Shown here piece by piece: positions 15,748 to 33,815 of a DNA stretch of 64,000 bases. Position 1 is the stretch's first letter. Each line of letters opens with the position of its first letter. The notes beneath the pieces are model-generated. The model did no database searches. It saw only the letters and a program-made list of their open reading frames with translations, and was not told the origin of the DNA. The position numbers were made by a program, and so were the translations under genes. The stretch spans positions 62,001 through 126,000 of the IMG/VR virus record IMGVR_UViG_3300030385_002649. One strand, 5' to 3'.

Positions 15748-15950
15748 CATTGGGTGAAGTAACCAAAGCATTATCAGCTTTGAGGGATAAGCTTCCAAAC
15801 GACCCGGACTTAAAAGTTAGGTTAATTGGTCACGACGACAGTTTTCATTTCGCGCCAACTTATGAAATTCTGGTGACTGACGGGGAAGTGGTGCTCAGCG
15901 GAGTGCCACCAGAGTTGGCGAAAGCATATGGCCTCGATGAGCGTAACTGA
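15744..15950 (+). CDS. hypothetical protein (68 aa)
   Basis: Coupled ORF in the + strand run. Confidence 0.6.
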   Translation: MTLGEVTKALSALRDKLPNDPDLKVRLIGHDDSFHFAPTYEILVTDGEVVLSGVPPELAKAYGLDERN

Positions 15951-17010
15951 ATACACCTATGCACCTTATAGGTTCCAACATGCCTCAGCCGTGTGCGCAT
16001 TAAAAGAACCAGCTAAAAACCACGGGTCCCAAAAATCGGGGGCCCTGGTTGCGTTTTACGCAGGGTTATCCGAATGCCACGAGTCTCAGCACGTCTGCCT
16101 AGCCTTCAACGGTGAAGTGTTCCACGAGCTAGAGCCGTACACTGGCAATCCTGTTCTTTTCTCCACAAGCGAGACAGAAGCTGTTCTAATTTACTCCAAG
16201 TTCGAAGACTTGCCAGCAAACAGGATAAGATGGTGGCAATATTGTTCCCTGTGGGCCCGCAAGATTTCCACCCTGGACGATGGAGTGCTTTGCGTTTCAG
16301 ACCCTGAGCAGATCATAGTGGAAATGGAAGACCTCCCAACAGGAAAAGGTCTTCTTACTAGGTGCCACCCTGTCAAGACAGAAATCCCGGGGTTCACAGA
16401 AGAAAAGTGGTGCTTACCAGTCTATCGTGAACACGACCCAACCCACCACGGTGCTCTCCTGATCAGCGATGACGGGTTTAAATGGGAAACCCATAGTCTT
16501 ATTGGGCACGATTCCACCTCCAATAGGGGCCTTCCCATTAGAAGCATCCAACCTACCTTCTGGAAGCAGAATGGAGAATTGCACGCTCTACTTCGAAACT
16601 TCAATTATTCGAGCAAGGGCCCTAGATTGGCTTATCATTCTAGGCTTGATGCAGACGGAAAATGGAAGCCTCTTGTAGAGTCCACACTCTACAATGCTAA
16701 TAATAGCTTAGTGGTCTTGCCCCACAATGACCGCAGTTTTGTGCTATGGAACCATGACCCTAAAGGCAGAAATAACTTGTTTCTTGGAGTGTTGAACACG
16801 CATGGTACAGGGGTTCCAAACGGTGGAGTGATTGCTAAAGTTTCTGATTATGGCCATTACCCTTCGATGGCTGTTATCGAGGGGAAGTTGCACATATTGT
16901 TCACAACTTCGATAGCTCACGTTGATTCCTTCACAGCCAAGTCATGCATCAAACATCGCATTTTCGACTTGGACTCAATGGAAATGTTTTTAAAAGCTAA
17001 GGGATTCTAA
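15928..17010 (+). CDS. BNR/Asp-box sialidase-like beta-propeller
   Basis: ISDDGFKWE Asp-box, IQPT...GELHALLR, RNNL, YPSMAVIEGKLHILFT. Confidence 0.65.
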   Translation: MASMSVTEYTYAPYRFQHASAVCALKEPAKNHGSQKSGALVAFYAGLSECHESQHVCLAFNGEVFHELEPYTGNPVLFSTSETEAVLIYSKFEDLPANRIRWWQYCSLWARKISTLDDGVLCVSDPEQIIVEMEDLPTGKGLLTRCHPVKTEIPGFTEEKWCLPVYREHDPTHHGALLISDDGFKWETHSLIGHDSTSNRGLPIRSIQPTFWKQNGELHALLRNFNYSSKGPRLAYHSRLDADGKWKPLVESTLYNANNSLVVLPHNDRSFVLWNHDPKGRNNLFLGVLNTHGTGVPNGGVIAKVSDYGHYPSMAVIEGKLHILFTTSIAHVDSFTAKSCIKHRIFDLDSMEMFLKAKGF

Positions 17011-19303: not shown

Positions 19304-19317
19304 AGTTAGAGGCTACG

Positions 19318-20619
19318 ATGGACAATGATATCTTAAAGATCGCCAGCATGTTGGGCGAAGACCCAGACGACATCAAGGAGATGGCACTCACTACAGGTGC
19401 CATTCCTGCTGGCCCATTTGGAGACGCTGGCTTCGTTAACAAGAAGAAGTCAAAGGCCAACAAAAAACGGAGCCGCAAAAAGAAGAAATCCGGATCCGAT
19501 AACAAAGAAGGTTCAGTTCTATACTCCGGAATAGAGGACGATAAGCACATCGAAGAGGCTAGCAGAGTAAAGAAACAAGTCGCCGCGCCGACAAGATTGA
19601 TGACTCCAGAAGAGAGAAAAGCGAAAAAGAAACAAGAGGTTAACCTTCACCTTAAGCAAAAAGCGCAACATCTATCCCCATCCAACATCAGAAGACCAAA
19701 TTCGATCATCTTCAACGGTGGGATCGACGTTAACCCAATGGAGGTTCCTGATTCCACTGAAATGCAAGGAATCAACGCTAGGGTAGAAAAGGCCGAAAGC
19801 TCACTTGGCGAATCATGGAAAAAACTCACTAATATCTTTAACGCCCTAAGACACTTAGAAATGTACGATGGCAAGATCCAGATCTTCGATAAGAACAAGT
19901 GTCACTTTTACAGACAATATCGAATCTTGAATGACATTTATTCCAGCGGACACTCAGCATATGAAGAGGCTCAAAATGAATGGGGCGGAGGGATTTCGCC
20001 GGGTCTAAGCATGCTTCCTCCCGTTAAAGGTTGGAGGGGGATCCACAATTGGAACAAAAACGCACTCGAACGTAGTCGCTACGTCAAGAATTACGTTCGT
20101 CAAATTGCTTACGTCTATTTGAAGCACATTGGTGAAAATGTTCTGATCACTCATATGGGCAGTTGCAGTAAAGCTGACTGTCTGAAATCCAACCACGCTC
20201 ATTTCCTTATTAAAGGATACTGCGATGGTTTCAAAGAGGACGGGCAAGTCTGGAATATGACTAGAGCGGTGAAAAAGGTATTCAAGATCCGCCAGAAAGC
20301 TCTGCAAGACTTCGCAGCTAAGAGAAGGAAGAAAAAGGAAAAACCACCAGCCCCTACTCTGAGCCCAGGAGACCAAGCACGCTATGATGAAGAAATCGCC
20401 ACTCATGGTAGGGTTAGAGGTGGACAAATGGCTTACGTCTTCCAAGACTACTATTATGACCTTATCCACAAGAACGATAAGGATGAGATGCCCGAAGTTG
20501 GCCCAGAAACTGCAGCCAAGCAGGGGCAAGCTCAAGCGCCTAACCCCACACAAGTTGACGAGTGGGCACCTTTTGATATCTCAGGGTATCTAACAGAAGA
20601 CCCGGATTTGTTTATATGA
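19318..20619 (+). CDS. hypothetical, probable virion/internal protein with LxEDPD motifs at both ends
   Basis: N-terminal IASMLGEDPD and C-terminal ISGYLTEDPDLF; TAAAAATA upstream. Confidence 0.7.
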   Translation: MDNDILKIASMLGEDPDDIKEMALTTGAIPAGPFGDAGFVNKKKSKANKKRSRKKKKSGSDNKEGSVLYSGIEDDKHIEEASRVKKQVAAPTRLMTPEERKAKKKQEVNLHLKQKAQHLSPSNIRRPNSIIFNGGIDVNPMEVPDSTEMQGINARVEKAESSLGESWKKLTNIFNALRHLEMYDGKIQIFDKNKCHFYRQYRILNDIYSSGHSAYEEAQNEWGGGISPGLSMLPPVKGWRGIHNWNKNALERSRYVKNYVRQIAYVYLKHIGENVLITHMGSCSKADCLKSNHAHFLIKGYCDGFKEDGQVWNMTRAVKKVFKIRQKALQDFAAKRRKKKEKPPAPTLSPGDQARYDEEIATHGRVRGGQMAYVFQDYYYDLIHKNDKDEMPEVGPETAAKQGQAQAPNPTQVDEWAPFDISGYLTEDPDLFI

Positions 20620-21719
20620 TACCAGTATATCAGCCATGGCTAACATCTAAAGAAAAGAACAACGTCCACGAAGCAATGGAGTCAGGTTGGATCTCATCAA
20701 CCGGCAAATACGTGGAGAAAGCCGAAGAGTTATTCGCAGACTTTGTAGGAACGAAACACGCTATAACAACCACCTCCGGAACTACAGCACTTCATTTATG
20801 CTTAAGAGCAATGAAAATCGAAGACCCTAAGAAATACGTTATCGTCCCGAACATTACGTTCATTGCTACCGCCTTCGCCGCCTCTTATGAAAGGATGGGA
20901 GTATTGATTGCTGAAGTTGATCCAAGAACGTGGAATATCGATCCATTACAAGTTGAACATTTCTGCTCTAATTATGATGTCGCAGCGGTAATTCCAGTAC
21001 ATTTATATGGGAATCCGGCTGACATGATTGCGCTTAAAGTCCTACAGGAAACCTGGGGTTTTGCGCTGATTGAAGACGCTTGCGAGTCTCTTGGTGCCAA
21101 AATCGGGGATAAAATGACGGGTTCTCTGGGCGACATGTCTTGCTTCTCCTTCTACGGGAACAAGACCTTCACTAGCGGAGAAGGCGGGATGGTCACGACG
21201 GATGATGACGAGTATGCTGAAAGGGCTCGGTTGCTACGAGGACAGGCTCAGGATCCGAACAAACGCTACTGGCACGTGGACGTGGGTCACAATTATCGCA
21301 TGACTAATATCCAAGCGGCTATCTTATGCGCCCAACTTGAGAGAGCGGACCAAATACTAGCCGAGAAGAAAAGAGTCTCTGACCGCTACTTGGCTAACTT
21401 GGGCGACATGGACGAATTGAAGTTCCAGAAGGTCTTCGAGGACCATGAACACTCTAATTGGTTAGTAAGCACTGAGCTTCTAACCACTAAAAATCACATT
21501 TTCTCAACTTGGATGCGGGAGAACGGGGTAGACACTAGAAAAGTCTTCTACCCGATTTCTGACATGCCGACGTATAAGGACTGTGAAACGCGAGAGCCTC
21601 CCCGAATATCGAGGAGGCTCTCTGAGCACGGTGTGTCGTTTCCATCTTATCCAGAATTGAGCAATAAAGAGGTCGACCACATTTGTGATCTAGTAAAGAA
21701 CTTTTTACTTAAGGCTTAG
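20616..21719 (+). CDS. DegT/DnrJ/EryC1/StrS PLP aminotransferase (perosamine-synthase-like)
   Basis: SGWISSTG, SGTTALHL, PVHLYG, EDACES, SFYGNKTFTSGEGG, NYRMTNIQAA. Confidence 0.93.
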   Translation: MIPVYQPWLTSKEKNNVHEAMESGWISSTGKYVEKAEELFADFVGTKHAITTTSGTTALHLCLRAMKIEDPKKYVIVPNITFIATAFAASYERMGVLIAEVDPRTWNIDPLQVEHFCSNYDVAAVIPVHLYGNPADMIALKVLQETWGFALIEDACESLGAKIGDKMTGSLGDMSCFSFYGNKTFTSGEGGMVTTDDDEYAERARLLRGQAQDPNKRYWHVDVGHNYRMTNIQAAILCAQLERADQILAEKKRVSDRYLANLGDMDELKFQKVFEDHEHSNWLVSTELLTTKNHIFSTWMRENGVDTRKVFYPISDMPTYKDCETREPPRISRRLSEHGVSFPSYPELSNKEVDHICDLVKNFLLKA

Positions 21720-22218
21720 GATGCCATTGTCCGCTTCGTACCAGTCTAGCCCAAGTTAGAGCGTCCTCATAAGAGACAATCCCTCCAGTGAAGATCTTAT
21801 ACTTGGACAGCGCAGATGCGACATTTTCAGGTCGCAGTGAACCATCTAGTTTCATCTGGTGATAATACCCAATTTTCTCTTCCGCTAAAGCGAACTTAGC
21901 ATCCGTCATATATTGTCCGACCCAGGAGAAAACTCCTGTCTTCTCCTGGCGTTGTGCATGAATTCGTTCATGAGTCATGATAGACCTGAACTTCACAGAG
22001 CCGGGTGGCTTCAGCTTGAGGTAGTAATCGAGGTCCGTTACGTAACAATACGGGGAAACAGTGGTGATATTGGATTTGGAGGGAACGACCAATGCTGCCA
22101 TTTTAGAACGTTGTTTAATTTCCTTCAGGGGAAGCCATTCATCGTCCAGTTCGTAAGATTTAGCGTTGGTACAACCCGAGAAAACCAAGACTGCGAGAAT
22201 TAACAAATACTTTTTCAT
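21709..22218 (-). CDS. lipoprotein with HExxH motif, paralog 2
   Basis: Lipobox VFSGC; MTHERIHAQRQE; alignable along its length with 17027..17524. Confidence 0.78.
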   Translation of the reverse strand: MKKYLLILAVLVFSGCTNAKSYELDDEWLPLKEIKQRSKMAALVVPSKSNITTVSPYCYVTDLDYYLKLKPPGSVKFRSIMTHERIHAQRQEKTGVFSWVGQYMTDAKFALAEEKIGYYHQMKLDGSLRPENVASALSKYKIFTGGIVSYEDALTWARLVRSGQWHPKP

Positions 22219-22230
22219 ATAGCACCTAGA

Positions 22231-22238
22231 TATTTTTA
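22231..22238 (-). promoter_or_regulatory. TAAAAATA putative late promoter
   Basis: 12 nt upstream of ATG22218. Confidence 0.5.
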
Positions 22239-23522
22239 GTGAAACTGTTCTGTTTCGGTTGAGCCTGCAAGAGCAGACGTTGATGGGTCCACGCCAATGG
22301 TTTTCTTGATATCGTCATAATATCCGGTACCAACAAATCCTTGGTGCTTGACAGCCTTGTAACCATCCGATTCCGCAAGAGCGAATTCTTCTTCCTGAAG
22401 AGTAGAGTACGCTGCCATTCCAGAATCTTTATAGTCATGAGCTAGCTTGTACATCGACGTGTTCAATGAGTGGAAGCCAGCAAGGGTGATGAATTGAAAC
22501 ACATAACCCATTTTGGCTAGTTCATTCTGAAATTCAGACAATTCTCCGGTCCGGTCCTTGTTAGATTCCCAATTGAAGGATGGAGAACAATTATACGCCA
22601 ACATCTTGTGTGGGTATTTGTCGTGAATTGCCGTGGCAAATTGACGGGCCTCTTCGAGGTCGGGTCTAGCTGTTTCTACCCATACCATGTCAGCGTAAGG
22701 AGCGTAAGCTAGACCTCTAGCGATTGCCATGTCCAACCCGCCAGTGACGCCATAGAATTGGCCTTGGCTTTCTCCGGTTAGGAAGGGCTTATCGCGGTCG
22801 TCGATGTCTGAAGTCATGAGTTTAGCGCTGTTGGCATCAGTTCTAGCAATGATCACAGTGTTAGCACCGACCACGTCTGCTGCTAACCTAGCGACTTTTA
22901 GTTTTTCGATGAATTCGCTGGTTGGGACTAGAACTTTACCGCCGAGGTGGCCACATTTCTTTTCGGAGGACAGTTGGTCTTCCAGGTGGACCCCTGCTGC
23001 TCCAGCTTCGATCATCCCTTTTACAACTTCGAAGGTGCACTGGACTCCGCCGAATCCGGCTTCAGCGTCAGCTACGATTGGCTGGACATAATTGTAACGG
23101 GGTTTCCCGTCTGTCTCTCCGAATTCGATCTGGTCTGCTCTTATCATGGCGTTGTTCAATTTCTGAACGTGGAAGGCCATGCTGTTGTTGGCGTAGAGGC
23201 TTAGGTCTGGGTACATCTGGCCGGACAGGTTGTTATCTGCGGCGACTTGCCATCCACTTGCGTAGACCGCCCTGAGGCCAGCTTGCGTCATTTGGATAGC
23301 TTGGTTTCCTGTTACTGCTCCGAGTGCTCTAACGGCGGGGCCTTCTTTTCGGAAGGCTTTTTGGCATTCTTTGTGCAATTGATCAGACATTTCCTCAGCT
23401 AGAAACCGTGGGTCTTTTGTGCCTCTCAGTCGGACGACATCTTGCTCGCTATAATCTCGTTGAACTTCTTTCCATCTGGGATCTGACCATTCGTTTTTTA
23501 AGTCTTCTGCTGATTTGTTCAT
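22236..23522 (-). CDS. aceA: isocitrate lyase
   Basis: SGWQVAAD, YPDLS, IVADAEAGFGG, HLEDQ, KKCGH, ARTDA, YNCSPSFNW, FITLAGFH. Confidence 0.97.
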   Translation of the reverse strand: MNKSAEDLKNEWSDPRWKEVQRDYSEQDVVRLRGTKDPRFLAEEMSDQLHKECQKAFRKEGPAVRALGAVTGNQAIQMTQAGLRAVYASGWQVAADNNLSGQMYPDLSLYANNSMAFHVQKLNNAMIRADQIEFGETDGKPRYNYVQPIVADAEAGFGGVQCTFEVVKGMIEAGAAGVHLEDQLSSEKKCGHLGGKVLVPTSEFIEKLKVARLAADVVGANTVIIARTDANSAKLMTSDIDDRDKPFLTGESQGQFYGVTGGLDMAIARGLAYAPYADMVWVETARPDLEEARQFATAIHDKYPHKMLAYNCSPSFNWESNKDRTGELSEFQNELAKMGYVFQFITLAGFHSLNTSMYKLAHDYKDSGMAAYSTLQEEEFALAESDGYKAVKHQGFVGTGYYDDIKKTIGVDPSTSALAGSTETEQFH

Positions 23523-23530
23523 GGTTCTCC

Positions 23531-25033
23531 TTAAGCGGGGTTGTGTTGTTGAGAGTAAATGAGTTGTTTGGTTTCTTCGGCGGCTTGTCTTAGTGTAGCC
23601 TCTGTGCCCAGTTCGCCAGTATCATGTGCTAATGCGATGATCGAATCGAGTACTTGAGCGAAGCACTGTTCAACTTGTTTCTTGGAAACAACCTCGTGTT
23701 GTAGTCTTTGAGCGACCATCAGCCTGCAGATTCTGTCCGTCGCGAGGTCTTCCATATACCCATCGAGCAAGACGGCTCCTCTACCATTAATGACGCCATT
23801 TCGGTATCTTACAGACACTCGGATGCAGTCCTGGAGCCCTTCTATAGTCATCGGAAGTGGAGTGGCCCGATCCCACATATCTGAAACATCCAGAAGATCA
23901 GGGATCGGACAATCAGGAATAATGTCTAGCTGATTAAATGCCGGGAATGCGCCAACTGCGATGTCATTCTGATCCGGATGTCCAGTCCAAGCTCCATCGA
24001 ACCCACAAGAGGCTTCATTAGCCTTATCCTTAGCCAGAAGTGTCAAAGCTCGGTCGTTCAATTCCTTATCGGAACGGCTTGGGTAAAGAGCGGTCATCCC
24101 GCCGATAGCGAGAATCCCAAATTCGTGGCATGTTTGGACAAGGTGGTGACGGAGGTTCTGAAAGAAAGCAGCGTCGTGGGGGATGCTGTTTCGGTCTGGG
24201 AGGAGGAATTCCTTCTCGCTATTCCAATCGATCCAGCTAGCCATATAATCCCATCGGCCAAGATTTAAGCCAAGTAGATGGTCTCGCAATTGGCCGATGA
24301 ATCCTCTTAAGTCACATGCCATTGGGTAGGATTCTACAAGGGCCATACATTTGATGTAGTTATCTTCTAGACCAACGGACCTAGCGGCGTGTTTTAGCAC
24401 TTCTGACCACCAGGCAGCTTCGGCTGGGTGTTCAGTCTTTGGAATGTAAATGCATAATGGTTTGTCCATTAGGTCGGGTTTGATGCGCCAAACGAGGTTG
24501 GCGATATCGAAGAGCGGGGCTGAAGTCAATCTACCGTTCACAACTTGGGTTAGGTGTAAGCCTCTGACTCTGCTCCAGACGACTGGATTGCCCGTGATCT
24601 CGTGAGTCTCTCCTCTTTTTTCATAAGATAAGGAGCCATGTAGGGCTTGGACAATGTTATCGTACCCTGTTTGGAGGGACTCCCAATTGTTAGCCATGGA
24701 ATCCTCTAAGTCGAGCATAACGCCTGGCGACCCGGAGTTGATCATTTTAACAACTAGTTCAGCGCTATCCGCTGGTCCGGTCATTTGGTTTCTTTGGTCT
24801 CGACACCAGGTTGGAAGGCTTACTTTCCAGGTTGATTTGCGTCTTGGCGGGGAGCCCGCTTTTTCACATTCACCCCTGGCCTTGGGCTTCCAATCTGGGA
24901 ACTTTTTGGTGCGTTCTAGAATCTCTCTACGTTGTTCTATCGCTTTGAAGGCATGGGCGGAGAATTTACTGTGAAATGACTCGTAGAATTCTAGAAATTC
25001 TGGGTCTACTAAATTGCCAACGTTAGGTTTCAT
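23531..25033 (-). CDS. aceB: malate synthase
   Basis: QMTGP, MLDLEDS, RVRGLH, YIPK, LVES, GLNLGRWDY, AIGGM, GFDGAWTGHP, MEDLAT (catalytic Arg/Glu/Asp/Asp present). Confidence 0.94.
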   Translation of the reverse strand: MKPNVGNLVDPEFLEFYESFHSKFSAHAFKAIEQRREILERTKKFPDWKPKARGECEKAGSPPRRKSTWKVSLPTWCRDQRNQMTGPADSAELVVKMINSGSPGVMLDLEDSMANNWESLQTGYDNIVQALHGSLSYEKRGETHEITGNPVVWSRVRGLHLTQVVNGRLTSAPLFDIANLVWRIKPDLMDKPLCIYIPKTEHPAEAAWWSEVLKHAARSVGLEDNYIKCMALVESYPMACDLRGFIGQLRDHLLGLNLGRWDYMASWIDWNSEKEFLLPDRNSIPHDAAFFQNLRHHLVQTCHEFGILAIGGMTALYPSRSDKELNDRALTLLAKDKANEASCGFDGAWTGHPDQNDIAVGAFPAFNQLDIIPDCPIPDLLDVSDMWDRATPLPMTIEGLQDCIRVSVRYRNGVINGRGAVLLDGYMEDLATDRICRLMVAQRLQHEVVSKKQVEQCFAQVLDSIIALAHDTGELGTEATLRQAAEETKQLIYSQQHNPA

Positions 25034-25310
25034 CGTCTTCCTCTTTTTCGATAATTTTTAGAAACCCAATTTTGTGAGCTATTGCTGCCCACAGCTGATC
25101 ACATATTGGTGCATGTGCGACCTCTTGGTATTTCCCGGTTTTAATGTCTTTTCTTAGGGTTTTTAGGTCTAGAACGTTCTTAACTGAACGAGTTACTAGA
25201 ACGTTCTCTTCTTTTTCCACCCAGCCTTTGGGTGTTTCTACAGCGAAATGTCTCCCGTTTCGTTTTACAACTAGTAGGGAGATAGGTTTTGTGAACACCC
25301 ATTCTTTCAT
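25023..25310 (-). CDS. hypothetical protein (95 aa)
   Basis: Coupled upstream of aceB. Confidence 0.65.
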   Translation of the reverse strand: MKEWVFTKPISLLVVKRNGRHFAVETPKGWVEKEENVLVTRSVKNVLDLKTLRKDIKTGKYQEVAHAPICDQLWAAIAHKIGFLKIIEKEEDDET

Positions 25311-25751
25311 TTAGTAATTCTTCCATTTAGGCTGGTAGAGCTTTTTTTTCTCCTCTTCAGTCATAGAGAGTTGTTCGACGTTGAGCTTGTCGATTTCGTC
25401 CATTAGTTGGTTACGCTGAAGGTTGAGGTCGCACGCTCTTTTTAAAATATGGCGGACACGATCTGGGTCATCTCCAAATTCTTCAGCCCACTCGTCCGGG
25501 GTCATTCTGCGAAACCTGTAGAGGTCGTCTTGAGCGTGCCACATTCTTACAGTAACAATTGAAAGTTTGTCAGTTAAGGAGCCAATTGTGTCCATTTCTT
25601 CCCTCTTGCCTTCTAATTCTACCGGGTTGCACGGGCTGTCATTGAACAAATTATGTAGAGTGGAATGAAACCACTCTACAAGGTGCTCGGAGTCTAATTT
25701 TTTAACTGCTGCGCTCTCAGCGCGCTCTGCCAAAATTGAGTAGTTTAACAT
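25311..25751 (-). CDS. DUF4254-like helical protein
   Basis: DTIGSLTDKLSI...WHAQD and LNLQRNQLMDEID resemble DUF4254 motifs. Confidence 0.6.
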   Translation of the reverse strand: MLNYSILAERAESAAVKKLDSEHLVEWFHSTLHNLFNDSPCNPVELEGKREEMDTIGSLTDKLSIVTVRMWHAQDDLYRFRRMTPDEWAEEFGDDPDRVRHILKRACDLNLQRNQLMDEIDKLNVEQLSMTEEEKKKLYQPKWKNY

Positions 25752-25769
25752 TAGGACAACCAGTATCTG

Positions 25770-26438
25770 ATGGCTATGAAATCAGAATCTAAGATATTTA
25801 TTCTCGGTTCGAGTGGGTTCGCCCATGAAATTAAGGACTATTTCTTAGAGTATTACAGAGCTAAGAGACCGAAGGGGCAAATAGCGGACCTTTACGTTAA
25901 TCATGTTGGGTTGCACGAACCTGAGTTCTATTTTGTTGGTCCTGACGGCATGTCTGTGAAAGAATATCACGCGGCCCTAAATGCCAGTCTGTCCAAGCCT
26001 ACCTTCTCTATTATGGGGTCTGGCAAGTGTTCTGTTAAGATTAAAATGCTAGAAGAGATTAGGGGACATATTATTAGTATGGTGCACCCTACCTCGCATG
26101 TTATTTCCGCTAAGATCGGTTCTGGGAGCATCATTGCCCCCGGAAGCGTGGTAGCCCCTAGAGCGGTGGTCGGAGACCATTGTCTTGTAAATTACAACGC
26201 CACAATCGGCCATGATGCTATTGTTGGAGATCTATCTGTTGTGTCTCCTAACGCGTCTATCGGAGGATCTTGTGTGCTGGGTCGCGGTGTCCATATTGGT
26301 TCTAATGCTTCGGTACGAGAAGGATTAAAAATTGGTGAAGGCGCAACGGTGGGTATGGGAGCGGTAGTAATTAAAGATGTCCCCTCTGGTGTAACCGTCG
26401 TTGGCGTGCCCGCTAGAACACTTATAAAGGAGAATTAA
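25770..26438 (+). CDS. NeuD/PglD/PerB-like sugar acetyltransferase (hexapeptide repeat)
   Basis: LGSSGFA...; left-handed beta-helix repeats; IGHD; GVPAR. Confidence 0.9.
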   Translation: MAMKSESKIFILGSSGFAHEIKDYFLEYYRAKRPKGQIADLYVNHVGLHEPEFYFVGPDGMSVKEYHAALNASLSKPTFSIMGSGKCSVKIKMLEEIRGHIISMVHPTSHVISAKIGSGSIIAPGSVVAPRAVVGDHCLVNYNATIGHDAIVGDLSVVSPNASIGGSCVLGRGVHIGSNASVREGLKIGEGATVGMGAVVIKDVPSGVTVVGVPARTLIKEN

Positions 26439-26663
26439 ATGAGTGACGAGGAAACTGTTGTTGAAGTTGATAAGTTGGCCGGAACAAAGCTCGGAGAGCT
26501 ACGTGATTTGGTCGCTAGTTTAGAAGAGGATTACCTCAAGGGTTGCGCAGGCGTTAAGACAGCCGCACGACGAGTAAGAAAAGGAGTCCAAAGCTTGGAC
26601 ACTATGCGTTCTGACATTCGTACCGAGCTTTTGTCCGCTATGAAGAAAGACAAAGAAGATTAA
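26439..26663 (+). CDS. histone H1-like Hc1 family small protein
   Basis: LRDLVASLEEDYLKGCAGVKTAARRVRKGVQSL...IRTE matches the bacterial Hc1-like pattern. Confidence 0.7.
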   Translation: MSDEETVVEVDKLAGTKLGELRDLVASLEEDYLKGCAGVKTAARRVRKGVQSLDTMRSDIRTELLSAMKKDKED

Positions 26664-27273
26664 CCTTCTACCTTACATAACTCCTGCGCTCAGTTTAGAA
26701 GACTCCATTGCTATAGTGGGTTCTAGTGGGAGACTGCTAGAAACCGATTTTGGTGATAGAATCGACAAATACGCAGAAATAGTAAGGTTTAATAGAGCCC
26801 CCGTAGAGGGCTGGGAAGCAAAAGTCGGATCTAAAACGACCCTAAGAGTTCTGAATAGGCCGACTTTTGCTTCTGCTCCCCTTCTTCGCTGGTCCGACGA
26901 CATTGAGTTCGCTAAAAAGATAAAAGATTCTAGGATCCTTGTTGGCGCTCATACTCAAGGTCTAGTAAAAGCAAGAGACAAATACGTTGACCCTAGTAAC
27001 GAATTATATGTGTTTAACCACGGAAAAGTGGTACAAGCCGCCCATAAAGCGAAATACATATTGACATCACCAACCATTGGATTCCAAATCGTCTTTCTGC
27101 TAGTTGCAGCAGGATTGAAACCCCACTTGTATGGTTTCGATTTTGAAGAAGGACGACCAAGAGACCATTATTGGCACGAACGACCACCTGGCTCTTGGTC
27201 TCACAATTTAGAAGCCGAAATGAAAGTAATGAGGGACCTAGTCTCCAAAGGAAAGGTTAATTTAATCCAATGA
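26659..27273 (+). CDS. GT29 sialyltransferase-like glycosyltransferase
   Basis: Sialylmotif L (SIAIVGSSGRLL...FGDRID....VRFNRAP..GWEAKVGSKTT), S (PTIGF...HLYGFD), III (HYWHE), VS (HNLEAE). The track start GTG26716 lies inside motif L; the frame is open to 26644, candidate ATT start at 26659. Confidence 0.85.
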   Translation: MNLLPYITPALSLEDSIAIVGSSGRLLETDFGDRIDKYAEIVRFNRAPVEGWEAKVGSKTTLRVLNRPTFASAPLLRWSDDIEFAKKIKDSRILVGAHTQGLVKARDKYVDPSNELYVFNHGKVVQAAHKAKYILTSPTIGFQIVFLLVAAGLKPHLYGFDFEEGRPRDHYWHERPPGSWSHNLEAEMKVMRDLVSKGKVNLIQ

Positions 27274-27671: not shown

Positions 27672-28272
27672 AAGCGATTTTCTGGCCGCTGGCTGGAGCG
27701 ATAGATTCTTTCCAGTAAGTTATCTTATGCTCTGGCAGAGCTTCTTTAATTTGTTTTCGGCCAAGATGTAAACCATTAAGATAATTGCGAGCAGCGAAAT
27801 AATTCTTGCTCTCAACGACTTTATCGGCTAACTTAATCTGGATAGCGATATGCTTGGGTGAAAGTTCCCTCCACTTTTGGGACACTTTCACCCAATATTC
27901 GTATGAAGGAAAGTGCTGGATTACGGAATAGCACAAAATCAGGTCGATCTTGTCCTCGACTTCAACATCTTCGGGGTTTCCGACATGTATCGTCTTGCAT
28001 TCCTTGCCTATAAAACGTTGAGCCTCAGTTAAACTAGCCTCACTAATATCCACAAGAGTGACATCAAAATGTTGAGAAAGCTCTTTAGCCAAAAGACCGC
28101 CGCCACAGCCCCAGTCCAAGGCAGTTTTAACTTCATCAAGATCAATCTGACTCAATACGTGAGATCTAACCCTATTGATGTGATCAGCAACCTTTTTCAT
28201 GGGCATGTGATCCACAAAGTGCTTATGGTTTAGGGTGACTTTAGTGTCCCAGTGTTTTCTTAGTTTATCCAT
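27652..28272 (-). CDS. class I SAM-dependent methyltransferase
   Basis: LDWGCGGG, LVDIS, DLILCYSVIQHF. Confidence 0.88.
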   Translation of the reverse strand: MDKLRKHWDTKVTLNHKHFVDHMPMKKVADHINRVRSHVLSQIDLDEVKTALDWGCGGGLLAKELSQHFDVTLVDISEASLTEAQRFIGKECKTIHVGNPEDVEVEDKIDLILCYSVIQHFPSYEYWVKVSQKWRELSPKHIAIQIKLADKVVESKNYFAARNYLNGLHLGRKQIKEALPEHKITYWKESIAPASGQKIAFIVLTA

Positions 28273-28951
28273 TTAATATTAGCTCAGCAATCTTAAAATC
28301 TAGTAAAGTGTCGATATCGACAGAATCTTCTATAGGCATGTGGTAGTTCGCTACTCTACCTTTAAAGAAATTACGGTCTCTGATGAATGATTCCATTCTA
28401 CGCAAATAGATCGCACCGTTTGGCCTTATAACTGAAGAATGGTCTTGAGACCTAGTGTTTCCAGTTATAAAAGGCAAAGACTGGTCGGAACAATGAACGA
28501 AACCGTCTGGATCAACTACAAGCCCTAAAGTTGGTGGAAATTCATAGTCCGTTGTACTAATAACTCCGTCTAAACTAGGGTCTTCCTCTAACAAAGCCAT
28601 GGCATCCATCACATCCACTTGACCTCGAAACGGAGCAGTGGGAAGAAACAATCCAACAACATCGTAATCATTGTACTCTTGAGATGCGACAAGATTGATA
28701 ACAGTTTCAAGGACCGTCGACTTATCTCCTGATAAAGCAGCGCTACGCTTTAAAGGAGTAACCCCTTCTATAGATCCTCCTACTTTTAGAATGTCGTCAG
28801 AGTCTGATGTTAGGATGACCGTGTGCGCTTCATCAACGACGGCCTCTAGGGTCCACTGAATTAGCGGCTTTCCTCCTAGAGGCCGGATGTTTTTGCCGGG
28901 CAACCTTTTTGACCCACCTCGGGCGGGCACTATTGCTAGGAGCTTAACCAT
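28265..28951 (-). CDS. acylneuraminate (NeuA/CMAS-type) cytidylyltransferase
   Basis: IVPARGGSKRLPGKNI, PTAPFR, NGAIY, SVDIDTLLDF. Confidence 0.92.
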   Translation of the reverse strand: MVKLLAIVPARGGSKRLPGKNIRPLGGKPLIQWTLEAVVDEAHTVILTSDSDDILKVGGSIEGVTPLKRSAALSGDKSTVLETVINLVASQEYNDYDVVGLFLPTAPFRGQVDVMDAMALLEEDPSLDGVISTTDYEFPPTLGLVVDPDGFVHCSDQSLPFITGNTRSQDHSSVIRPNGAIYLRRMESFIRDRNFFKGRVANYHMPIEDSVDIDTLLDFKIAELILNG

Positions 28952-29730
28952 TTCTGTGTTGCCAAAACCTTTTCAACTTCATCATAAGTCTTTATTAGAT
29001 TTTCGACTTTATCCAGGTACAACTGGCAGTCTCCATCAGAAACAGCCTTCCGAGGCTCCGGGTGGCATTCAGCGAAAATACCGCTATACTCATAAGCGAG
29101 AGAAGCGATCATATACTTAGCGGCAAGTTCTCTGTCCCCACCGGTAAAATCGCCCTTTTTGCGTTGAGTAGAGTGGGTGCAATCTAGGATCACTCTATCA
29201 TAGTGCTTCGACATTTCTTCGGCAGCGCCAAAATCAACGATTAATTGATTATACCCAAAGAACGTACCTCTTTCAGTGATCCAAACTTCACAGTCAGGGT
29301 TCTCGGCTTTTACCTTGCCAACAAAGTGTTTCGTGCTGTCCGGATTAATCCATTGGCCCTTCTTGATGTTCACCTTGTCGAAGCATTTTCCGGACTCGAT
29401 TAGAAGGTCGGTTTGGCGGCACAGAAAGGCTGGGATCTGGCATAGTTCGACGCCTTGGTCGGCAATGAGCTTAGCTTGATGACACTCGTGGATGTCCGTG
29501 GTCAGTCTAATTCCTGGAAACTCTTCTCGGACTTTTTCCATTAATCGGAGGGACTCGTCGATACCAGGACCCCTACCTCCATCAACTGCGGTTCTGTTGG
29601 CCTTGTCGAAAGAAGCTTTGTAGTACCAGTCTCTCCCATCCATGAACTTGGTTAGTTCTTCGGCACACTTCAAGTAAAGATGCTCGTTTTCCATGGAGCA
29701 TGGCCCCAAAATCCAGACTTTATCCGACAT
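28936..29730 (-). CDS. kdsA: Kdo-8-phosphate synthase (metal-dependent type)
   Basis: GPC, KASFDKANRT, TDIHE, QIPAFLCRQTDLL, NIKKGQ, ERGTFFGY, DCTH, ECHP...SDG; ATG29730 is the likelier start (track 29763). Confidence 0.92.
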   Translation of the reverse strand: MSDKVWILGPCSMENEHLYLKCAEELTKFMDGRDWYYKASFDKANRTAVDGGRGPGIDESLRLMEKVREEFPGIRLTTDIHECHQAKLIADQGVELCQIPAFLCRQTDLLIESGKCFDKVNIKKGQWINPDSTKHFVGKVKAENPDCEVWITERGTFFGYNQLIVDFGAAEEMSKHYDRVILDCTHSTQRKKGDFTGGDRELAAKYMIASLAYEYSGIFAECHPEPRKAVSDGDCQLYLDKVENLIKTYDEVEKVLATQKWLSS

Positions 29731-30637
29731 ATGAATCCCATCTTCTTTCAATATCATCAACAACGCCTCTTACTCTGAGTTGTTGTTCTCTTGTAACTTC
29801 GCTAAAAGGCGCCCTATTTTCAGTAGGCAGCAATTGTTTATAATTTAGAGCGGATTGCAACGCTTTATGCCATCCGATTTTCTTGAACACATTAAACAAA
29901 GGTTCTTCAAATTTAGTAACAATGTCGTGTGCTACCGCCAAATCACCAGCCGTAAACTCTTCCAAAAACCGGTCTTCAATTTCAGGAAAAATGTTTCCAA
30001 TCCCGCCAAGGAAAGTCTGCGCACCAGCGGGCCCTGTCAGCAAGAATCTCCTGCAGCTACCGCCAGCGGGGAAGATGAGAAAATCATCATCGGCCAATCT
30101 AGAAACATCATAGGCGAGCGCGAGCTTAGAACTTTCCTCTTTCATGCCTATGATGTTAGGGTGTTTTTTCAGTTTTTCGACTATTTGTGGTGTATAATCG
30201 TACATGCCGCCTAGAGCGTGTCGCATAAACATTCCGTGAATCATAACTGGCACTTCAGAACGGTCAGCGGCCCAATAGAAGTAATTCACAACGCTTTCAT
30301 CGTCGTAATACCTGTCAGGATAAAACAGGAGAATCGCATCTGGCTTGATTGCGTTAGCGAACTCTAGTTCTCTAGATAAGTGTTTGTTAGCTAATGGCGG
30401 GAGACCCATAATGAACGAACCTTGAAACTCTGAGCATAGCTCGTTCATTTCTTGGAGTTCAAATTCGTCCAGCAAGTTAAATCTTGTAGTTCCGGCTGTT
30501 GTTAGGATTGTTTTGGCTCCTTCTCTGTGAAGGTAATTGAGGTATCCTTTTATAGAGGCGCTGGACAATTCCCTTTCGCTAAATGCGGGGGGAATTGGAT
30601 ATATAACGCCTTCGCTCAATTTTTCAATGTTGGACAT
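29720..30637 (-). CDS. DHDPS/N-acetylneuraminate-lyase family class I aldolase (divergent)
   Basis: YPIPPAF, AGTT, PNIIGMKEES Schiff-base Lys; His where the family Tyr usually sits. Confidence 0.82.
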   Translation of the reverse strand: MSNIEKLSEGVIYPIPPAFSERELSSASIKGYLNYLHREGAKTILTTAGTTRFNLLDEFELQEMNELCSEFQGSFIMGLPPLANKHLSRELEFANAIKPDAILLFYPDRYYDDESVVNYFYWAADRSEVPVMIHGMFMRHALGGMYDYTPQIVEKLKKHPNIIGMKEESSKLALAYDVSRLADDDFLIFPAGGSCRRFLLTGPAGAQTFLGGIGNIFPEIEDRFLEEFTAGDLAVAHDIVTKFEEPLFNVFKKIGWHKALQSALNYKQLLPTENRAPFSEVTREQQLRVRGVVDDIERRWDSYVG

Positions 30638-31136: not shown

Positions 31137-31973
31137 ATGAAAATTTCAGTAGGAATGCTAGTCGTCAACGGACGCCCCTTCATTGAAGCGCAACTGAAAA
31201 ACCTATACGACATCGCACACGAAATCGTAATCTGCGAAGGAGGAGACAAGTTCTGGCATGCCAGACATGGTTATTGGAGATCCACAGACGGCACAATAGA
31301 CATTATCAAAAACTTCCCAGACCCGGACAAAAAGATTAAACTGATCCAAAAGAATTGGAAAAACAAAAACGAAATGTCCCACACCTTCAGCGAAGGCATG
31401 ACAGGAGACATAATTTATAGCGTAGACTTAGACGAATTCATGAACCCAACCGAACTAGTGGCAGTGTGCAAAAAACTCATGACACAGCCATTCACTTCAG
31501 TCACAATCCCACATTACGTCTTTTATGGAGATTTCGAAACTCTAATGGCAATGGAGCATTCACCAACATGGGTGCAAGTACCACGCATCTTCAAAAGACA
31601 AAAGAATTCATTGATCCATCATCTCCCAATGGCATATTGGAACATGACAACAAAAACACCATACAACCCTAAGAAAATGCCCCACAAAATGGTACCAGAC
31701 GTGTTCATCTACCACTATTCTTGGGTGTATCGCAAATCCGTCAGAGACAAAATCGCATATTACGCTCATCGCATTCCTGGTTGCATTAGAAAAGACTGGC
31801 TAGACAAATACTTCGAAGACTTCGCCAGCAAAAAAGACGCTCTTCTAAAATCCAAAGAGAACATCAGACCAACAGAAGGCGCAAAACAGTTCTTGCTACC
31901 ATTTAAAGGGAAACACCCAGAAATCGTTTCTGAAATTCAGAAGGATATAGCGCTACTTGACGCGGTAAAGTGA
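31137..31973 (+). CDS. GT2-family glycosyltransferase
   Basis: MLVVNGRPFIEAQL, STDGTIDII, VDLDE, IYHYSW. Confidence 0.85.
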   Translation: MKISVGMLVVNGRPFIEAQLKNLYDIAHEIVICEGGDKFWHARHGYWRSTDGTIDIIKNFPDPDKKIKLIQKNWKNKNEMSHTFSEGMTGDIIYSVDLDEFMNPTELVAVCKKLMTQPFTSVTIPHYVFYGDFETLMAMEHSPTWVQVPRIFKRQKNSLIHHLPMAYWNMTTKTPYNPKKMPHKMVPDVFIYHYSWVYRKSVRDKIAYYAHRIPGCIRKDWLDKYFEDFASKKDALLKSKENIRPTEGAKQFLLPFKGKHPEIVSEIQKDIALLDAVK

Positions 31974-33122
31974 TAATTTCCTGCCGCCAGGATAACTGCT
32001 AATTCGTTTCACCAATTCTAAGCCATGCTTGATTAACGCCTTTTCATAAACCTCGGCTGTGTTTATATCCTCTAAGATTAAGAACTTCTTGGTAAGGTTA
32101 GCTAACAGCTTGGCAAATATTTCATGCTTAAATGTTATATGGTGCACAATCGCTAAAGCAATCACAAGTTCAGAAGAGTATCTCTCGATTTCACGATACT
32201 CATTTCTAATAAGCCTTTCGATGTCAGAATAAACAAACGTTGCCGGAAGACTCTTATCAAATCCGTCAGCGTCGTCAATGCAAGGTTCAACATAATCGAA
32301 ACCAACCGCTGATTCTACGCCGCCCTGCTGTTTATCAATAGCCAAGAAAGTGTAATACCCCTTATTACAAGCGACATCAGTTACAGTTTTGTACTCTAAC
32401 TCATCCAATAAATCAGAGACTATCTTAGCCTTTGGATTAACTTTCTCAGGATGTTTCACATCCATGATGTTAGAGTAGTTGTTGTACCAATGGTTTTTCT
32501 TCTGAGGAAGTTTAATCGTCTTAACCCAAGTTAACAATTCATCCCAAAACTCTTTACTTTGGCAATTTCCTTTATAGCGCTTGTGATGGTTAGCTAACCA
32601 TCCGCCGTGGCCGTTGACTGATTTTCCATTATATTTCGAGTATCCACCTTGGACATCTTTCTTAAAAACATAACTGTTGATGATATACGCCAGTTTTACA
32701 AAAGAATAAGAAGCATAATTCGAGTCAATTTCAGCAACCGCATTGTAGTCTAACCAAACAAATTCGCCTCTTGAGTAAGCTATGTTGCCTTCATGAATAT
32801 CAAATAAGACGATTCCTTTCTTCAATAACTCTACGTTCATCTCACAAAGGCCAACCACTATCTTGAGAGATTGCTTACATGTCAATTCTTGGATTTTTAT
32901 TAAGTGTTCAATTATAGGATGCTCAATGACAGTCCTTAATTCTTTACCCCATCTTAATTTGATGTCAGTTTTTGAATATGGTTGAGTGTATTTGCAGGAG
33001 CTAATAGCGTCTAAAAACTGCAGTTCTCTACTCTGTAAACCCCTGTACAGTTTCTCTTTGTGGTAAAACAGTGTCGATGAAGAATCAGGGTGTCTTTTAA
33101 TGTCTTTTTTAGTAAGGATCAT
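31953..33122 (-). CDS. NoeA-like protein: kinase-like N-domain + SAM methyltransferase
   Basis: FDIHEGNI...WLDY, then DVACNKGYY, GFD, ALAIVHH. Confidence 0.7.
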   Translation of the reverse strand: MILTKKDIKRHPDSSSTLFYHKEKLYRGLQSRELQFLDAISSCKYTQPYSKTDIKLRWGKELRTVIEHPIIEHLIKIQELTCKQSLKIVVGLCEMNVELLKKGIVLFDIHEGNIAYSRGEFVWLDYNAVAEIDSNYASYSFVKLAYIINSYVFKKDVQGGYSKYNGKSVNGHGGWLANHHKRYKGNCQSKEFWDELLTWVKTIKLPQKKNHWYNNYSNIMDVKHPEKVNPKAKIVSDLLDELEYKTVTDVACNKGYYTFLAIDKQQGGVESAVGFDYVEPCIDDADGFDKSLPATFVYSDIERLIRNEYREIERYSSELVIALAIVHHITFKHEIFAKLLANLTKKFLILEDINTAEVYEKALIKHGLELVKRISSYPGGRKLSLYRVK

Positions 33123-33792: not shown

Positions 33793-33815
33793 AGTGGTCT
33801 ACCAATAAATATTTT

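What the first reader, a model, noticed from the sequence alone, without database searches (positions are those of the whole stretch)
22236..25033. Complete glyoxylate shunt (aceB-aceA) embedded among phage genes
Seen: adjacent, co-oriented malate synthase and isocitrate lyase, 8 nt apart, with catalytic motifs intact. They are flanked by a phage-type lipoprotein and small hypotheticals, with no aceK, iclR or other housekeeping neighbours. Established: these two enzymes suffice to bypass the decarboxylating TCA steps. Inference: an auxiliary metabolic module conserving carbon from acetate or lipid for sugar and nucleotide synthesis, which fits the adjacent glycan island.
Basis: partly seen in the sequence, partly recalled or inferred. 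Interest (0 to 1): 0.8.

Follow-up and report, generated by a model that had tools for sequence, protein, structure and literature searches.

The report
Glyoxylate shunt genes in huge phage
A 370-kb marine phage really does carry intact malate synthase and isocitrate lyase genes, but phages with this pair have been reported since 2017; what is new here is the unusual malate synthase type and the pair's position inside a sugar-synthesis gene island.

Summary
Window 23531-25033(-) encodes a malate-synthase-family protein and 22236-23522(-) an isocitrate lyase. They are co-oriented and 8 nt apart, and the catalytic residues are conserved. The contig is IMGVR_UViG_3300030385_002649, a 370.8-kb Tara Oceans huge phage. 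An assembly chimera is ruled out. Two separate per-run assemblies span the junctions without any difference. Base composition and codon use match the rest of the window. A diverged 294-kb phage from another sample has the same gene order.

Three corrections apply:
- The malate synthase is not a canonical AceB. It scores below NCBIfam's cut-off and belongs to a divergent clade found in Acidobacteriota, Eremiobacterota and other bacteria, where it is usually adjacent to isocitrate lyase.
- The pair lies inside a roughly 20-kb Kdo/nonulosonic-acid glycan island, not beside it.
- It is probably the middle of a five-gene operon.

The kind is already published: Nishimura 2017, Hurwitz 2013, and a 2025 huge-phage preprint whose collection includes this contig. 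IMG/VR holds at least 547 phage ICL loci, and at least 25 of the best 79 have a malate synthase directly upstream.

The most likely function is a working auxiliary glyoxylate shunt. A direct link to glycan synthesis is possible but unproven. Interest is low to moderate.

The parts
23531..25033 (-). aceB-like malate synthase, 500 aa, of the divergent 'DQRNQMTG' clade of the malate synthase A family
   Evidence: Pfam MS_TIM-barrel 5e-47 and MS_C 9e-9. TIGR01344 258.8 bits, below the cut-off of 594.5. E 1e-63 to E. coli MSA 3cuz. R155, R157, E234, D262 and D429 invariant. AF2 model pLDDT 88.8, pTM 0.89.
22236..23522 (-). aceA isocitrate lyase, 428 aa
   Evidence: NF011645 615.2 bits, above the cut-off of 562. 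E 1e-152 to 6lrp, aligned to the last residue. K188-K189-C190-G191-H192 and the other active-site columns invariant.
23523..23530 (-). 8-nt spacer GGAGAACC that carries the ribosome-binding site of aceA
   Evidence: Sequence read directly.
25023..25310 (-). orf95, unknown function; overlaps the aceB start by 11 nt; conserved upstream of aceB in L005
   Evidence: 45% identity to L005 2614-2919; no Pfam or PHROG hit.
25311..25751 (-). orf146 (ENA calls a 94-aa version, 25311-25595); phage family with a weak DUF4254 match; first gene of the putative operon
   Evidence: (66% identity to L005 2183-2614).
21709..22218 (-). 169-aa putative lipoprotein with an HERIH (HExxH) motif, 17 nt downstream of aceA; a paralogue lies at 17027-17524
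   Evidence: cluster c26; viral clusters; structural resemblance to M48/M56 peptidases at TM 0.57, a lead only.
25654..25680 (.). Perfect 10-bp inverted repeat with a 7-nt loop, in the divergent region between the operon and the NeuD-like gene; unique in the window
   Evidence: 0 expected by chance; found only in copies of this same contig.
20616..21719 (+). DegT/LegC-like sugar aminotransferase, the island gene flanking the operon on one side
   Evidence: Pfam 3.8e-102; TIGR04181 313.8 bits, below cut-off; 57% identity to the L007 orthologue.
25770..26438 (+). NeuD/PglB/VioB-family hexapeptide sugar N-acyltransferase, transcribed divergently from the operon
   Evidence: TIGR03570 141 bits, cut-off 160.8. 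The same neighbour is found in L005 and L007.
26716..27273 (+). GT29 sialyltransferase-like protein
   Evidence: Pfam 3.1e-19.
28265..28951 (-). CMP-ulosonic-acid cytidylyltransferase, PseF/KdsB-like
28936..29763 (-). Kdo-8-phosphate synthase (KdsA), which consumes PEP
   Evidence: NF003543 255.9 bits, above the cut-off of 242; Pfam DAHP_synth_1 4e-42.
29720..30637 (-). Divergent DHDPS-family class I aldolase/dehydratase
15928..17010 (+). BNR_2 sialidase-like protein, marking the left end of the glycan island
   Evidence: an orthologue is present in L007.
31137..35209 (.). Right part of the island: GT2 (31137-31973, +), a methyltransferase-like protein (31953-33122, -), GT2 (33109-33792, -), and Methyltransf_24 (34643-35209, +)

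Best explanation
The two genes are a phage-resident, vertically inherited glyoxylate shunt. AceA cleaves isocitrate to glyoxylate and succinate. The AceB-like enzyme condenses glyoxylate with acetyl-CoA to give malate. They probably form the middle of a five-gene leftward operon (orf146, orf95, aceB, aceA, lipoprotein), and during infection they would divert host isocitrate around the two CO2-releasing TCA steps. That keeps C2 and C4 carbon available for oxaloacetate, PEP, aspartate and sugar precursors. Shown: gene identity, conserved catalytic residues, residence in the phage genome, and conservation in diverged relatives. Inferred: enzyme activity, operon structure, expression during infection, and that part of the benefit is feeding the surrounding PEP- and acetyl-CoA-consuming glycan island. 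With no AceK present, flux partition would depend on enzyme abundance alone.
For: Identity. The malate synthase clade is a genuine shunt enzyme in cells: of 80 bacterial loci, 60 have an ICL within 6 kb and 47 have it directly downstream on the same strand, and Acidobacteriota locus L011 has a divergently transcribed iclR followed by MS and ICL. Phage residence: tail, baseplate and virion genes in the window. The contig is a 370,804-bp marine genome rated 'Complete'. Logan per-run contigs of 90 kb and 44 kb span 21000-26500 with no differences and no joints, and an independent ENA assembly has the same gene order. GC (0.489 and 0.488) and GC3 lie within one SD of the window's genes, and codon-use correlation is typical. 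Inheritance: the 294-kb phage contig L007 from another sample has the same island, with orthologues at 28-69% identity, MS at 49% and ICL at 62%; L005 is similar. Tight coupling: an 8-nt spacer containing GGAG, an 11-nt overlap with orf95, and 17 nt to the lipoprotein gene. Recurrence: IMG/VR holds at least 547 ICL stretches, and at least 25 of the best 79 other loci have MS directly upstream in the same order. Literature.
Against: There is no activity or expression evidence; no RNA run was listed. The malate synthase fails the NCBIfam equivalog cut-off (258.8 against 594.5) and sits on a long branch (1.24 against a median of 0.28), so altered specificity is not excluded. AceK, IclR and PEP carboxykinase were not seen among the ORFs scanned. 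The host is unknown, so whether it already has the shunt could not be checked. The promoter scan gave no signal for the operon (2 sites against 6.1 expected).
Confidence: 0.75

Rival explanations
1. The pair is a dedicated part of the phage's glycan pathway rather than a general carbon-saving module. It could be a hard-wired supply of C4 and PEP for the Kdo-8-P synthase. Alternatively glyoxylate could be a substrate of the DHDPS-like aldolase, or malyl-CoA (the intermediate of the malate synthase reaction) could be an acyl donor for the neighbouring hexapeptide acyltransferase.
For: The pair lies inside the island, between DegT and the divergently transcribed NeuD-like acyltransferase, in the window, L005 and L007. 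KdsA, 4 kb away, passes its equivalog cut-off. In the separate L003/L013 lineage, MS and ICL sit within a same-strand run of GT1 and GT2 genes. L008 has an epimerase/dehydratase 1.3 kb downstream. In Eremiobacterota the same MS clade follows a GT87 gene, and in L010 it lies in a Wzy/GT cluster.
Against: 23 IMG/VR loci, and by its matching 131-aa upstream gene probably the published TARA genome too, carry aceBA in or near a gp32-RecA-exonuclease-DnaB-RNR-ClpP...ThyX module, with glycosyltransferases about 16 kb away in the TARA genome. Most bacterial members of the clade are simply adjacent to ICL, and at least one has an IclR regulator next to it. The phage lineages with a glycan context may share one ancestor (AU p 0.605), so they are not independent observations. 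All catalytic residues match ordinary malate synthase.
Confidence: 0.1
2. The genes benefit the host during a carrier, pseudolysogenic or lysogenic state (the 'host adaptation' idea of Nishimura et al. 2017) rather than lytic production.
For: This was proposed for the TARA aceBA phage, which also carries LPS and capsule genes. The surface-glycan island here would fit superinfection exclusion.
Against: None of the window ORFs that were scanned matched an integrase or repressor family. The genome is a 370-kb huge phage; by general knowledge, such phages are mostly virulent. This idea does not exclude the best explanation.
Confidence: 0.1
3. One or both enzymes have shifted substrate. The ICL might act as a 2-methylisocitrate lyase, or the MS-like protein as a malyl-CoA lyase or thioesterase, or with another 2-oxo acid.
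For: The MS is below the equivalog cut-off and on a long branch. It gives weak hits to malyl-CoA lyase and HpcH/HpaI models.
Against: The ICL scores 615 bits on the ICL equivalog but only 101 bits on prpB, whose cut-off is 354. The MS retains the C-terminal domain with the catalytic Asp, and its clade is linked to ICL in bacteria.
Confidence: 0.04
4. Assembly chimera or bacterial contamination.
For: None found.
Against: (see the best explanation).
Confidence: 0.01

Closest known systems
aceBA operon of the marine environmental viral genome TARA_ERS478052_N000008 (Nishimura et al. 2017, PMC5332604)
   Same: A Tara Oceans phage genome with aceB immediately upstream of aceA on the same strand, in a genome that also encodes KdsA, NeuA and glycosyltransferases.
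   Different: That genome is 178.6 kb with 37.5% GC. Its AceB is canonical (TIGR01344 E 2.7e-215), and its glycosyltransferases lie about 16 kb from aceBA. Here the genome is 370.8 kb with 45% GC, the MS belongs to the divergent clade (258.8 bits), and the pair is inside the glycan island.
ICL and MS genes of huge phages in the Huge Phage Genome Collection (bioRxiv 10.1101/2025.02.27.640493)
   Same: The preprint reports 98 ICL and 22 MS genes in huge phages, adjacent in 20 genomes, with MS found only in marine, soil and plant-related samples. This contig is huge_phage_1906 of that collection.
   Different: The preprint gives counts only. It does not describe the MS subtype, the operon or the glycan-island context. 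I could not confirm that this genome is among the 22, because that table is not held.
Bacterial iclR-aceB-aceA loci of Acidobacteriota and relatives (for example L011, GCA_040754075.1)
   Same: The same MS clade (about 50% identity) with the same aceB-then-aceA order.
   Different: The bacterial loci can have an IclR regulator and housekeeping neighbours. The phage has neither, and its MS evolves about four times faster.
E. coli and Salmonella aceBAK operon
   Same: The same gene order and reactions; catalytic residues are shared.
   Different: 33% (MS) and 55% (ICL) identity; no aceK and no iclR.
IMG/VR phage lineage with gp32-RecA-exonuclease-DnaB-RNR-ClpP-[MS-ICL]-ThyX
   Same: A phage-borne aceB-aceA pair in the same order.
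   Different: The MS is of canonical type and forms its own viral clade. The context is replication and nucleotide metabolism, not glycan synthesis.

Membership tests
Isocitrate lyase (EC 4.1.3.1; NCBIfam NF011645 / TIGR01346) | Score above the curated equivalog cut-off | tested here: met
   615.2 against 562, and 512.8 against 275.9.
Isocitrate lyase (EC 4.1.3.1; NCBIfam NF011645 / TIGR01346) | Catalytic loop K-K-C-G-H and the conserved Mg/substrate-binding columns (SGW, DAEAGFGG, RTDA, NCSPSF) | tested here: met
   K188-H192, S89-W91, D152-G159, R227-A230, N311 and S313-F316 are invariant in an 8-sequence alignment that includes Salmonella AceA.
Isocitrate lyase (EC 4.1.3.1; NCBIfam NF011645 / TIGR01346) | Full length, including the C-terminal segment | tested here: met
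   Aligned over residues 7-428, to the last residue of 6lrp.
Isocitrate lyase (EC 4.1.3.1; NCBIfam NF011645 / TIGR01346) | Cleaves isocitrate to glyoxylate and succinate | not testable with these tools
   Needs an enzyme assay.
Malate synthase A as defined by NCBIfam TIGR01344 | Score above the curated equivalog cut-off | tested here: not met
   258.8 against 594.5. It is therefore not filed as canonical AceB.
Malate synthase family (Pfam PF01274 + PF20659) | TIM-barrel and C-terminal domains above the gathering scores | tested here: met
   160.4 against 26.4, and 36.2 against 23.1.
Malate synthase family (Pfam PF01274 + PF20659) | Catalytic Arg (RVRGLH), the Mg ligands Glu (LVE) and Asp (GRWDY), and the catalytic Asp of the C-terminal domain (MEDxAT) | tested here: met
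   R157, E234, D262 and D429 are invariant in 37 sequences, including Salmonella AceB and canonical-type viral MS.
Malate synthase family (Pfam PF01274 + PF20659) | Cellular members of the same clade are linked to isocitrate lyase | tested here: met
   60 of 80 loci have an ICL within 6 kb and 47 have it directly downstream; iclR is present in L011.
Malate synthase family (Pfam PF01274 + PF20659) | Fold matches solved malate synthase | tested here: inconclusive
Only the sequence match to 3cuz, E 1e-63 over residues 65-474, is available.
Phage auxiliary metabolic gene | Lies within a viral genome with viral genes on both sides, not at a contig end, and not an assembly artefact | tested here: met
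Phage auxiliary metabolic gene | Conserved in related phages and compositionally at home in the genome | tested here: met
Enterobacterial aceBAK/iclR regulon | AceK kinase/phosphatase and IclR repressor adjacent | tested here: not met
   Neither was seen among the ORFs scanned from about 12.8 to 37.4 kb.

The most novel reading that the evidence does not exclude
In this lineage of huge marine phages the glyoxylate shunt has become a built-in part of a virus-encoded Kdo/nonulosonic-acid glycan pathway. It would act either as a dedicated PEP/C4 feeder, or through direct use of glyoxylate or malyl-CoA as a glycan building block. The divergent, fast-evolving malate synthase and the two conserved small upstream proteins (orf146, orf95) would be adapted to that role, for example by taking over the flux control that AceK provides in enterobacteria.
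Probability: 0.12. Interest if true: 0.65.

Novelty: new member of a known kind. Interest (0 to 1): 0.3.

Why it matters
Phage-borne glyoxylate-shunt genes have been a recognised class of marine auxiliary metabolic genes since 2013-2017, so this instance does not change the picture. It adds three modest points. First, phages carry at least two unrelated malate synthase types. The type found here belongs to a clade that NCBI's annotation leaves as 'hypothetical protein' in many Acidobacteriota, Eremiobacterota and Eisenbacteria genomes, so shunt reconstructions for those phyla may be under-called. Second, in at least two huge-phage lineages the pair sits inside glycan-synthesis clusters, which gives a concrete hypothesis linking central-carbon rerouting to virus-driven surface-glycan synthesis. 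Third, I found no biochemical characterisation of any phage ICL or MS in the searchable literature. This intact, well-assembled pair is a reasonable candidate for that first test.

Tried and rejected
- **Mosaic origin (ICL from a phage gene pool, MS from bacteria).** The quick ICL tree nested the window group among viral ICLs. The AU test did not reject grouping them with the Acidobacteriota-type bacterial ICLs, and the constrained tree was actually better (p 0.79), so I dropped the idea.
- **Single or multiple acquisition of the divergent MS by phages.** Monophyly of the five phage sequences is not rejected (p 0.605), so this stays unresolved. Long branches are in play.
- **Host inference.** The window has no tRNA or Rfam match. 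The KdsA, orf146 and lipoprotein Atlas neighbours are viral clusters. The MS and ICL relatives are equidistant from many phyla. The host remains unknown.
- **Docking of CoA and Mg.** Complex prediction did not fold this kind of complex, so it gives no evidence either way.
- **Expression.** No RNA run was listed.
- **Promoters and terminators.** No enrichment over shuffles and no obvious operon promoter.
- **Cultured or deposited phages.** PHROGs has no family for either protein. GenBank phage records contain no true phage MS, and the only true phage record with a full-length ICL is Phage C48C1.
- **L002 as a phage relative.** Its MS nests within Vulcanimicrobiota and no ICL follows it, so it is probably bacterial or proviral DNA.
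Full report
**Observation.** The minus strand carries two ORFs at exactly the stated coordinates: 23531-25033 (500 aa) and 22236-23522 (428 aa). They are separated by 8 nt, reading TAA-GGAGAACC-ATG, which places a ribosome-binding site for the second gene in the spacer.

The downstream protein is an isocitrate lyase by every test:
- NCBIfam NF011645 scores 615.2 bits against a cut-off of 562, and TIGR01346 scores 512.8 against 275.9.
- It matches solved bacterial ICLs at E 1e-152 and aligns to their last residue.
- The KKCGH loop and the other active-site columns are invariant in an alignment that includes Salmonella AceA.

The upstream protein belongs to the malate synthase family. It matches Pfam MS_TIM-barrel at 5e-47 and MS_C at 9e-9, and E. 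coli malate synthase A 3cuz at E 1e-63. It scores only 258.8 bits on the TIGR01344 equivalog, whose cut-off is 594.5. Its catalytic Arg (RVRGLH), the two Mg ligands (Glu of LVE, Asp of GRWDY) and the catalytic Asp of the C-terminal domain (MEDLAT) are invariant across 37 sequences, including Salmonella AceB and a second, canonical type of viral MS. An AlphaFold model built from 36 sequences is confident (pLDDT 88.8, pTM 0.89). A fold comparison could not be run.

**Is it phage DNA, and is the assembly sound?** The window encodes a collagen-like tail fibre, a Tail_P2_I baseplate protein, a virion structural protein, an NAD-dependent ligase, UvdE, MazG, dUTPase and thymidylate kinase. It is part of IMGVR_UViG_3300030385_002649, which is 370,804 bp. 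A 2025 preprint's collection lists this contig as huge_phage_1906: marine, 'Complete', GC 0.454. The DNA comes from a Tara Oceans sample (ENA assembly of ERR599373, PRJEB4419).

- Logan's separate per-run assemblies of two runs of that sample give contigs of 90 kb (depth 53) and 44 kb (depth 275). Both span window 21000-26500 with no differences, joints or loose ends. They come from the same sample, so they are independent assemblies but not independent samples.
- The ENA assembly has the identical gene order.
- GC (0.489 and 0.488) and GC3 of the two genes lie within one SD of the window's genes (0.453 ± 0.037; 0.446 ± 0.069), and their codon use correlates with the rest as well as other genes do.
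- A diverged phage contig from another sample (L007, 293.6 kb, JGI 3300032132) has the same island in the same order. Orthologues range from 28 to 69% identity, with MS at 49% and ICL at 62% falling in that range. A 5-kb Logan contig (L005) shows the same local order.

**Anatomy.** Five co-oriented genes run from 25751 to 21709:
- orf146 (ENA calls a 94-aa version), a phage family with a weak DUF4254 match.
- orf95, which overlaps the aceB start by 11 nt.
- aceB, then aceA.
- After a further 17 nt, a 169-aa protein that begins with a lipoprotein-type signal (MKKYLLILAVLVFSGC) and carries an HERIH motif. Its Atlas neighbours are viral clusters, with a structural resemblance to HExxH peptidases that is only a lead.

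orf146 and orf95 are conserved upstream of aceB in L005 (66% and 45% identity). A unique, perfect 10-bp inverted repeat lies at 25654-25680, in the region that diverges towards the NeuD-like gene. The operon reading is inferred from spacing alone. The σ70-type promoter scan found nothing useful, and no RNA run was listed.

**Context.** The pair is inside a glycan island of roughly 20 kb (15.9-35.2 kb), not beside it. The island genes, in order, are:
- BNR_2 sialidase-like protein, a GT1-like protein and a DegT/LegC-like aminotransferase;
- the ace operon;
- a NeuD/PglB-family acyltransferase, an Hc1 histone-like protein and a GT29 sialyltransferase-like protein;
- a methyltransferase and a PseF/KdsB-like cytidylyltransferase;
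- Kdo-8-P synthase, which passes its equivalog cut-off (255.9 against 242);
- a divergent DHDPS-family aldolase, two GT2 proteins and further methyltransferases.

A second phage lineage shows a similar setting. L003 (a 167-kb contig) and L013 have MS and ICL (47% and 48% identity) inside a same-strand run of GT1 and GT2 genes. L008 has an epimerase/dehydratase 1.3 kb downstream.

**What kind of malate synthase is it?** The nearest proteins, all at 46-57% identity, form a large clade marked by the motif DQRNQMTG. At least 592 matching stretches were found in the species-representative genome collection. The best 80 come mainly from Acidobacteriota, Eremiobacterota/Vulcanimicrobiota and Eisenbacteria, with a few from Gemmatimonadota, Verrucomicrobiia, Dormibacterota, Chloroflexota and others. 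NCBI records name several of them 'hypothetical protein', while JGI names them malate synthase.

Of the 80 bacterial loci, 60 have an ICL within 6 kb and 47 have it directly downstream on the same strand. In Acidobacteriota locus L011 the arrangement is a divergently transcribed iclR followed by MS and ICL. The clade is therefore a genuine glyoxylate-shunt enzyme that the TIGR01344 cut-off misses.

In the MS tree, the window's protein pairs with that of L005 (SH-aLRT 97) inside this clade, on a long branch (1.24 against a median of 0.28). A very long, fully supported branch separates the clade from canonical MSA and from a monophyletic group of 23 viral MS of canonical type. Monophyly of the five phage sequences within the divergent clade is not rejected (AU p 0.605). 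No donor phylum can be named.

**Origin of the ICL.** The window's ICL forms a supported group (99) with those of L007, L008 and three metagenomic proteins. The quick tree placed that group among viral ICLs, which suggested a mosaic pair. The AU test did not reject placing it with the bacterial ICLs that accompany the divergent MS, and the constrained tree had the higher likelihood (p 0.79). Joint acquisition of aceB-aceA from a bacterium with this operon type is therefore the simplest reading, and I do not claim a mosaic origin.

**How common and how well known?** IMG/VR contains at least 547 stretches encoding ICL relatives. Among the best 79 loci other than this contig, at least 25 have an MS directly upstream in the same aceB-then-aceA order. 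In many of those the neighbours are gp32, RecA, a 5'-3' exonuclease, DnaB, ribonucleotide reductase, ClpP, an amidase and ThyX. ICL without MS often follows ribonucleotide reductase.

Published reports:
- Hurwitz et al. 2013 reported aceAB in ocean viromes.
- Nishimura et al. 2017 described an aceBA operon in a complete 178.6-kb Tara viral genome. Its AceB is canonical (TIGR01344 E 2.7e-215), and its glycosyltransferases lie about 16 kb away.
- The 2025 huge-phage preprint counted 98 ICL and 22 MS genes, adjacent in 20 genomes.

Among deposited phage genomes, neither protein has a PHROG family. No true phage record has an MS, and only Phage C48C1 (Kyanoviridae) has a full-length ICL, annotated as hypothetical. 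I found no biochemical study of a phage ICL or MS.

**Mechanism.** The best-supported reading (confidence about 0.75) is an active, phage-borne glyoxylate shunt. By established biochemistry, ICL and MS together bypass isocitrate dehydrogenase and 2-oxoglutarate dehydrogenase, so acetyl-CoA carbon is retained as malate and succinate. Host enzymes could convert these to oxaloacetate, PEP and aspartate.

The gene identities, conserved residues, phage residence and long-term retention are shown. Activity, timing and benefit are inferred. However, the aceBA pairs of other phage lineages sit among replication and nucleotide genes, so the association is specific to this lineage and may reflect shared ancestry rather than repeated selection.

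A direct chemical role in the glycan pathway is not excluded, and I rate it at about 0.1. That role could be glyoxylate feeding the DHDPS-like aldolase, or malyl-CoA serving the acyltransferase.

**Verdict.** This is a further member of a published kind of auxiliary metabolic module. It is distinguished by an unusual malate synthase clade and by its position within a Kdo/nonulosonic-acid island. Interest is 0.3.

Noticed in passing
window 6173-7462 (+): A phage-encoded poly(ADP-ribose) polymerase-like protein with WGR, PARP regulatory and PARP catalytic domains (Pfam 2.5e-14, 3.9e-8 and 5.1e-27). It matches phrog_23333, annotated 'polymerase'.
   Followed up: no
window 15928-35209: A glycan island of about 20 kb that looks like a Kdo/nonulosonic-acid pathway. 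It holds a BNR sialidase-like protein, a LegC-like aminotransferase, a NeuD-like acyltransferase, a GT29 sialyltransferase-like protein, a PseF-like cytidylyltransferase, KdsA (passes its equivalog cut-off), a divergent DHDPS-like aldolase, GT1 and GT2 proteins and several methyltransferases. It is syntenic with L007.
   Followed up: partly
window 26439-26663 (+); also L005 827-1015 and L007 7578-7763: An Hc1 (chlamydial histone H1-like) protein is conserved beside the NeuD-like gene in three related phages.
   Followed up: no
window 21709-22218 (-) and 17027-17524 (+): Two paralogous small proteins belonging to viral families; L007 14262-14765 falls in the same cluster. The first has a lipoprotein signal and an HERIH motif. 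Its predicted structure resembles M48/M56 metallopeptidases (TM 0.57), which is only a lead.
   Followed up: partly
window 25654-25680: A perfect 10-bp inverted repeat with a 7-nt loop in the divergent region upstream of the ace operon. It is unique in the window and absent from relatives. It could be an operator or a terminator-like hairpin.
   Followed up: partly
L099-L178, and proteins P0027, P0031, P0034, P0037, P0052, P0082, P0094, P0107: A malate synthase clade with the motif DQRNQMTG gave at least 592 matching stretches in the species-representative genome collection. It is mostly adjacent to ICL, yet several NCBI records name it 'hypothetical protein'. This is probably because TIGR01344's cut-off is too high for it (inferred from the phage protein's score, not measured on the bacterial ones). 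Glyoxylate-shunt calls for Acidobacteriota, Eremiobacterota and Eisenbacteria MAGs may be incomplete.
   Followed up: partly
L010 4489-7524 and L012 4360-7494: In two Eremiobacterota-type loci the malate synthase directly follows a GT87 glycosyltransferase. In L010 it lies in a GT61, GT87, MS, GT1, Wzy, GT1 cluster with no ICL called in the locus.
   Followed up: no
L014-L018 (GVMAG giant-virus contigs), e.g. L017 3353-6706: Single ORFs of about 1,110 aa that fuse an N-terminal malate synthase domain (about residues 27-536) to a C-terminal ICL domain (about 552-1111).
   Followed up: partly
L013 2172-5045, 7422-9824 and 11263-11976: Inteins with LAGLIDADG domains interrupt a GT1 gene and the gene upstream of MS. 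A GIY-YIG/NUMOD3 homing endonuclease sits directly downstream of MS, where its relative L003 has ICL.
   Followed up: no
L002 (IMGVR_UViG_3300047163_000092): This 'viral' contig's MS nests within Vulcanimicrobiota sequences on a short branch, and no ICL follows it. It is probably bacterial or proviral DNA.
   Followed up: partly
L180 4995-6236 (Phage C48C1, OQ984149.1, Kyanoviridae): A deposited 156-kb phage genome encodes a full-length ICL homologue (50.6% identity) annotated 'hypothetical protein', with no MS beside it.
   Followed up: partly
IMG/VR loci L020-L098: ICL is widespread in IMG/VR (at least 547 stretches). In 28 of the fetched loci a ribonucleotide reductase large subunit lies within 8 kb of the ICL, often directly upstream. 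This points to a recurrent ICL-only module in phage nucleotide-metabolism regions.
   Followed up: partly
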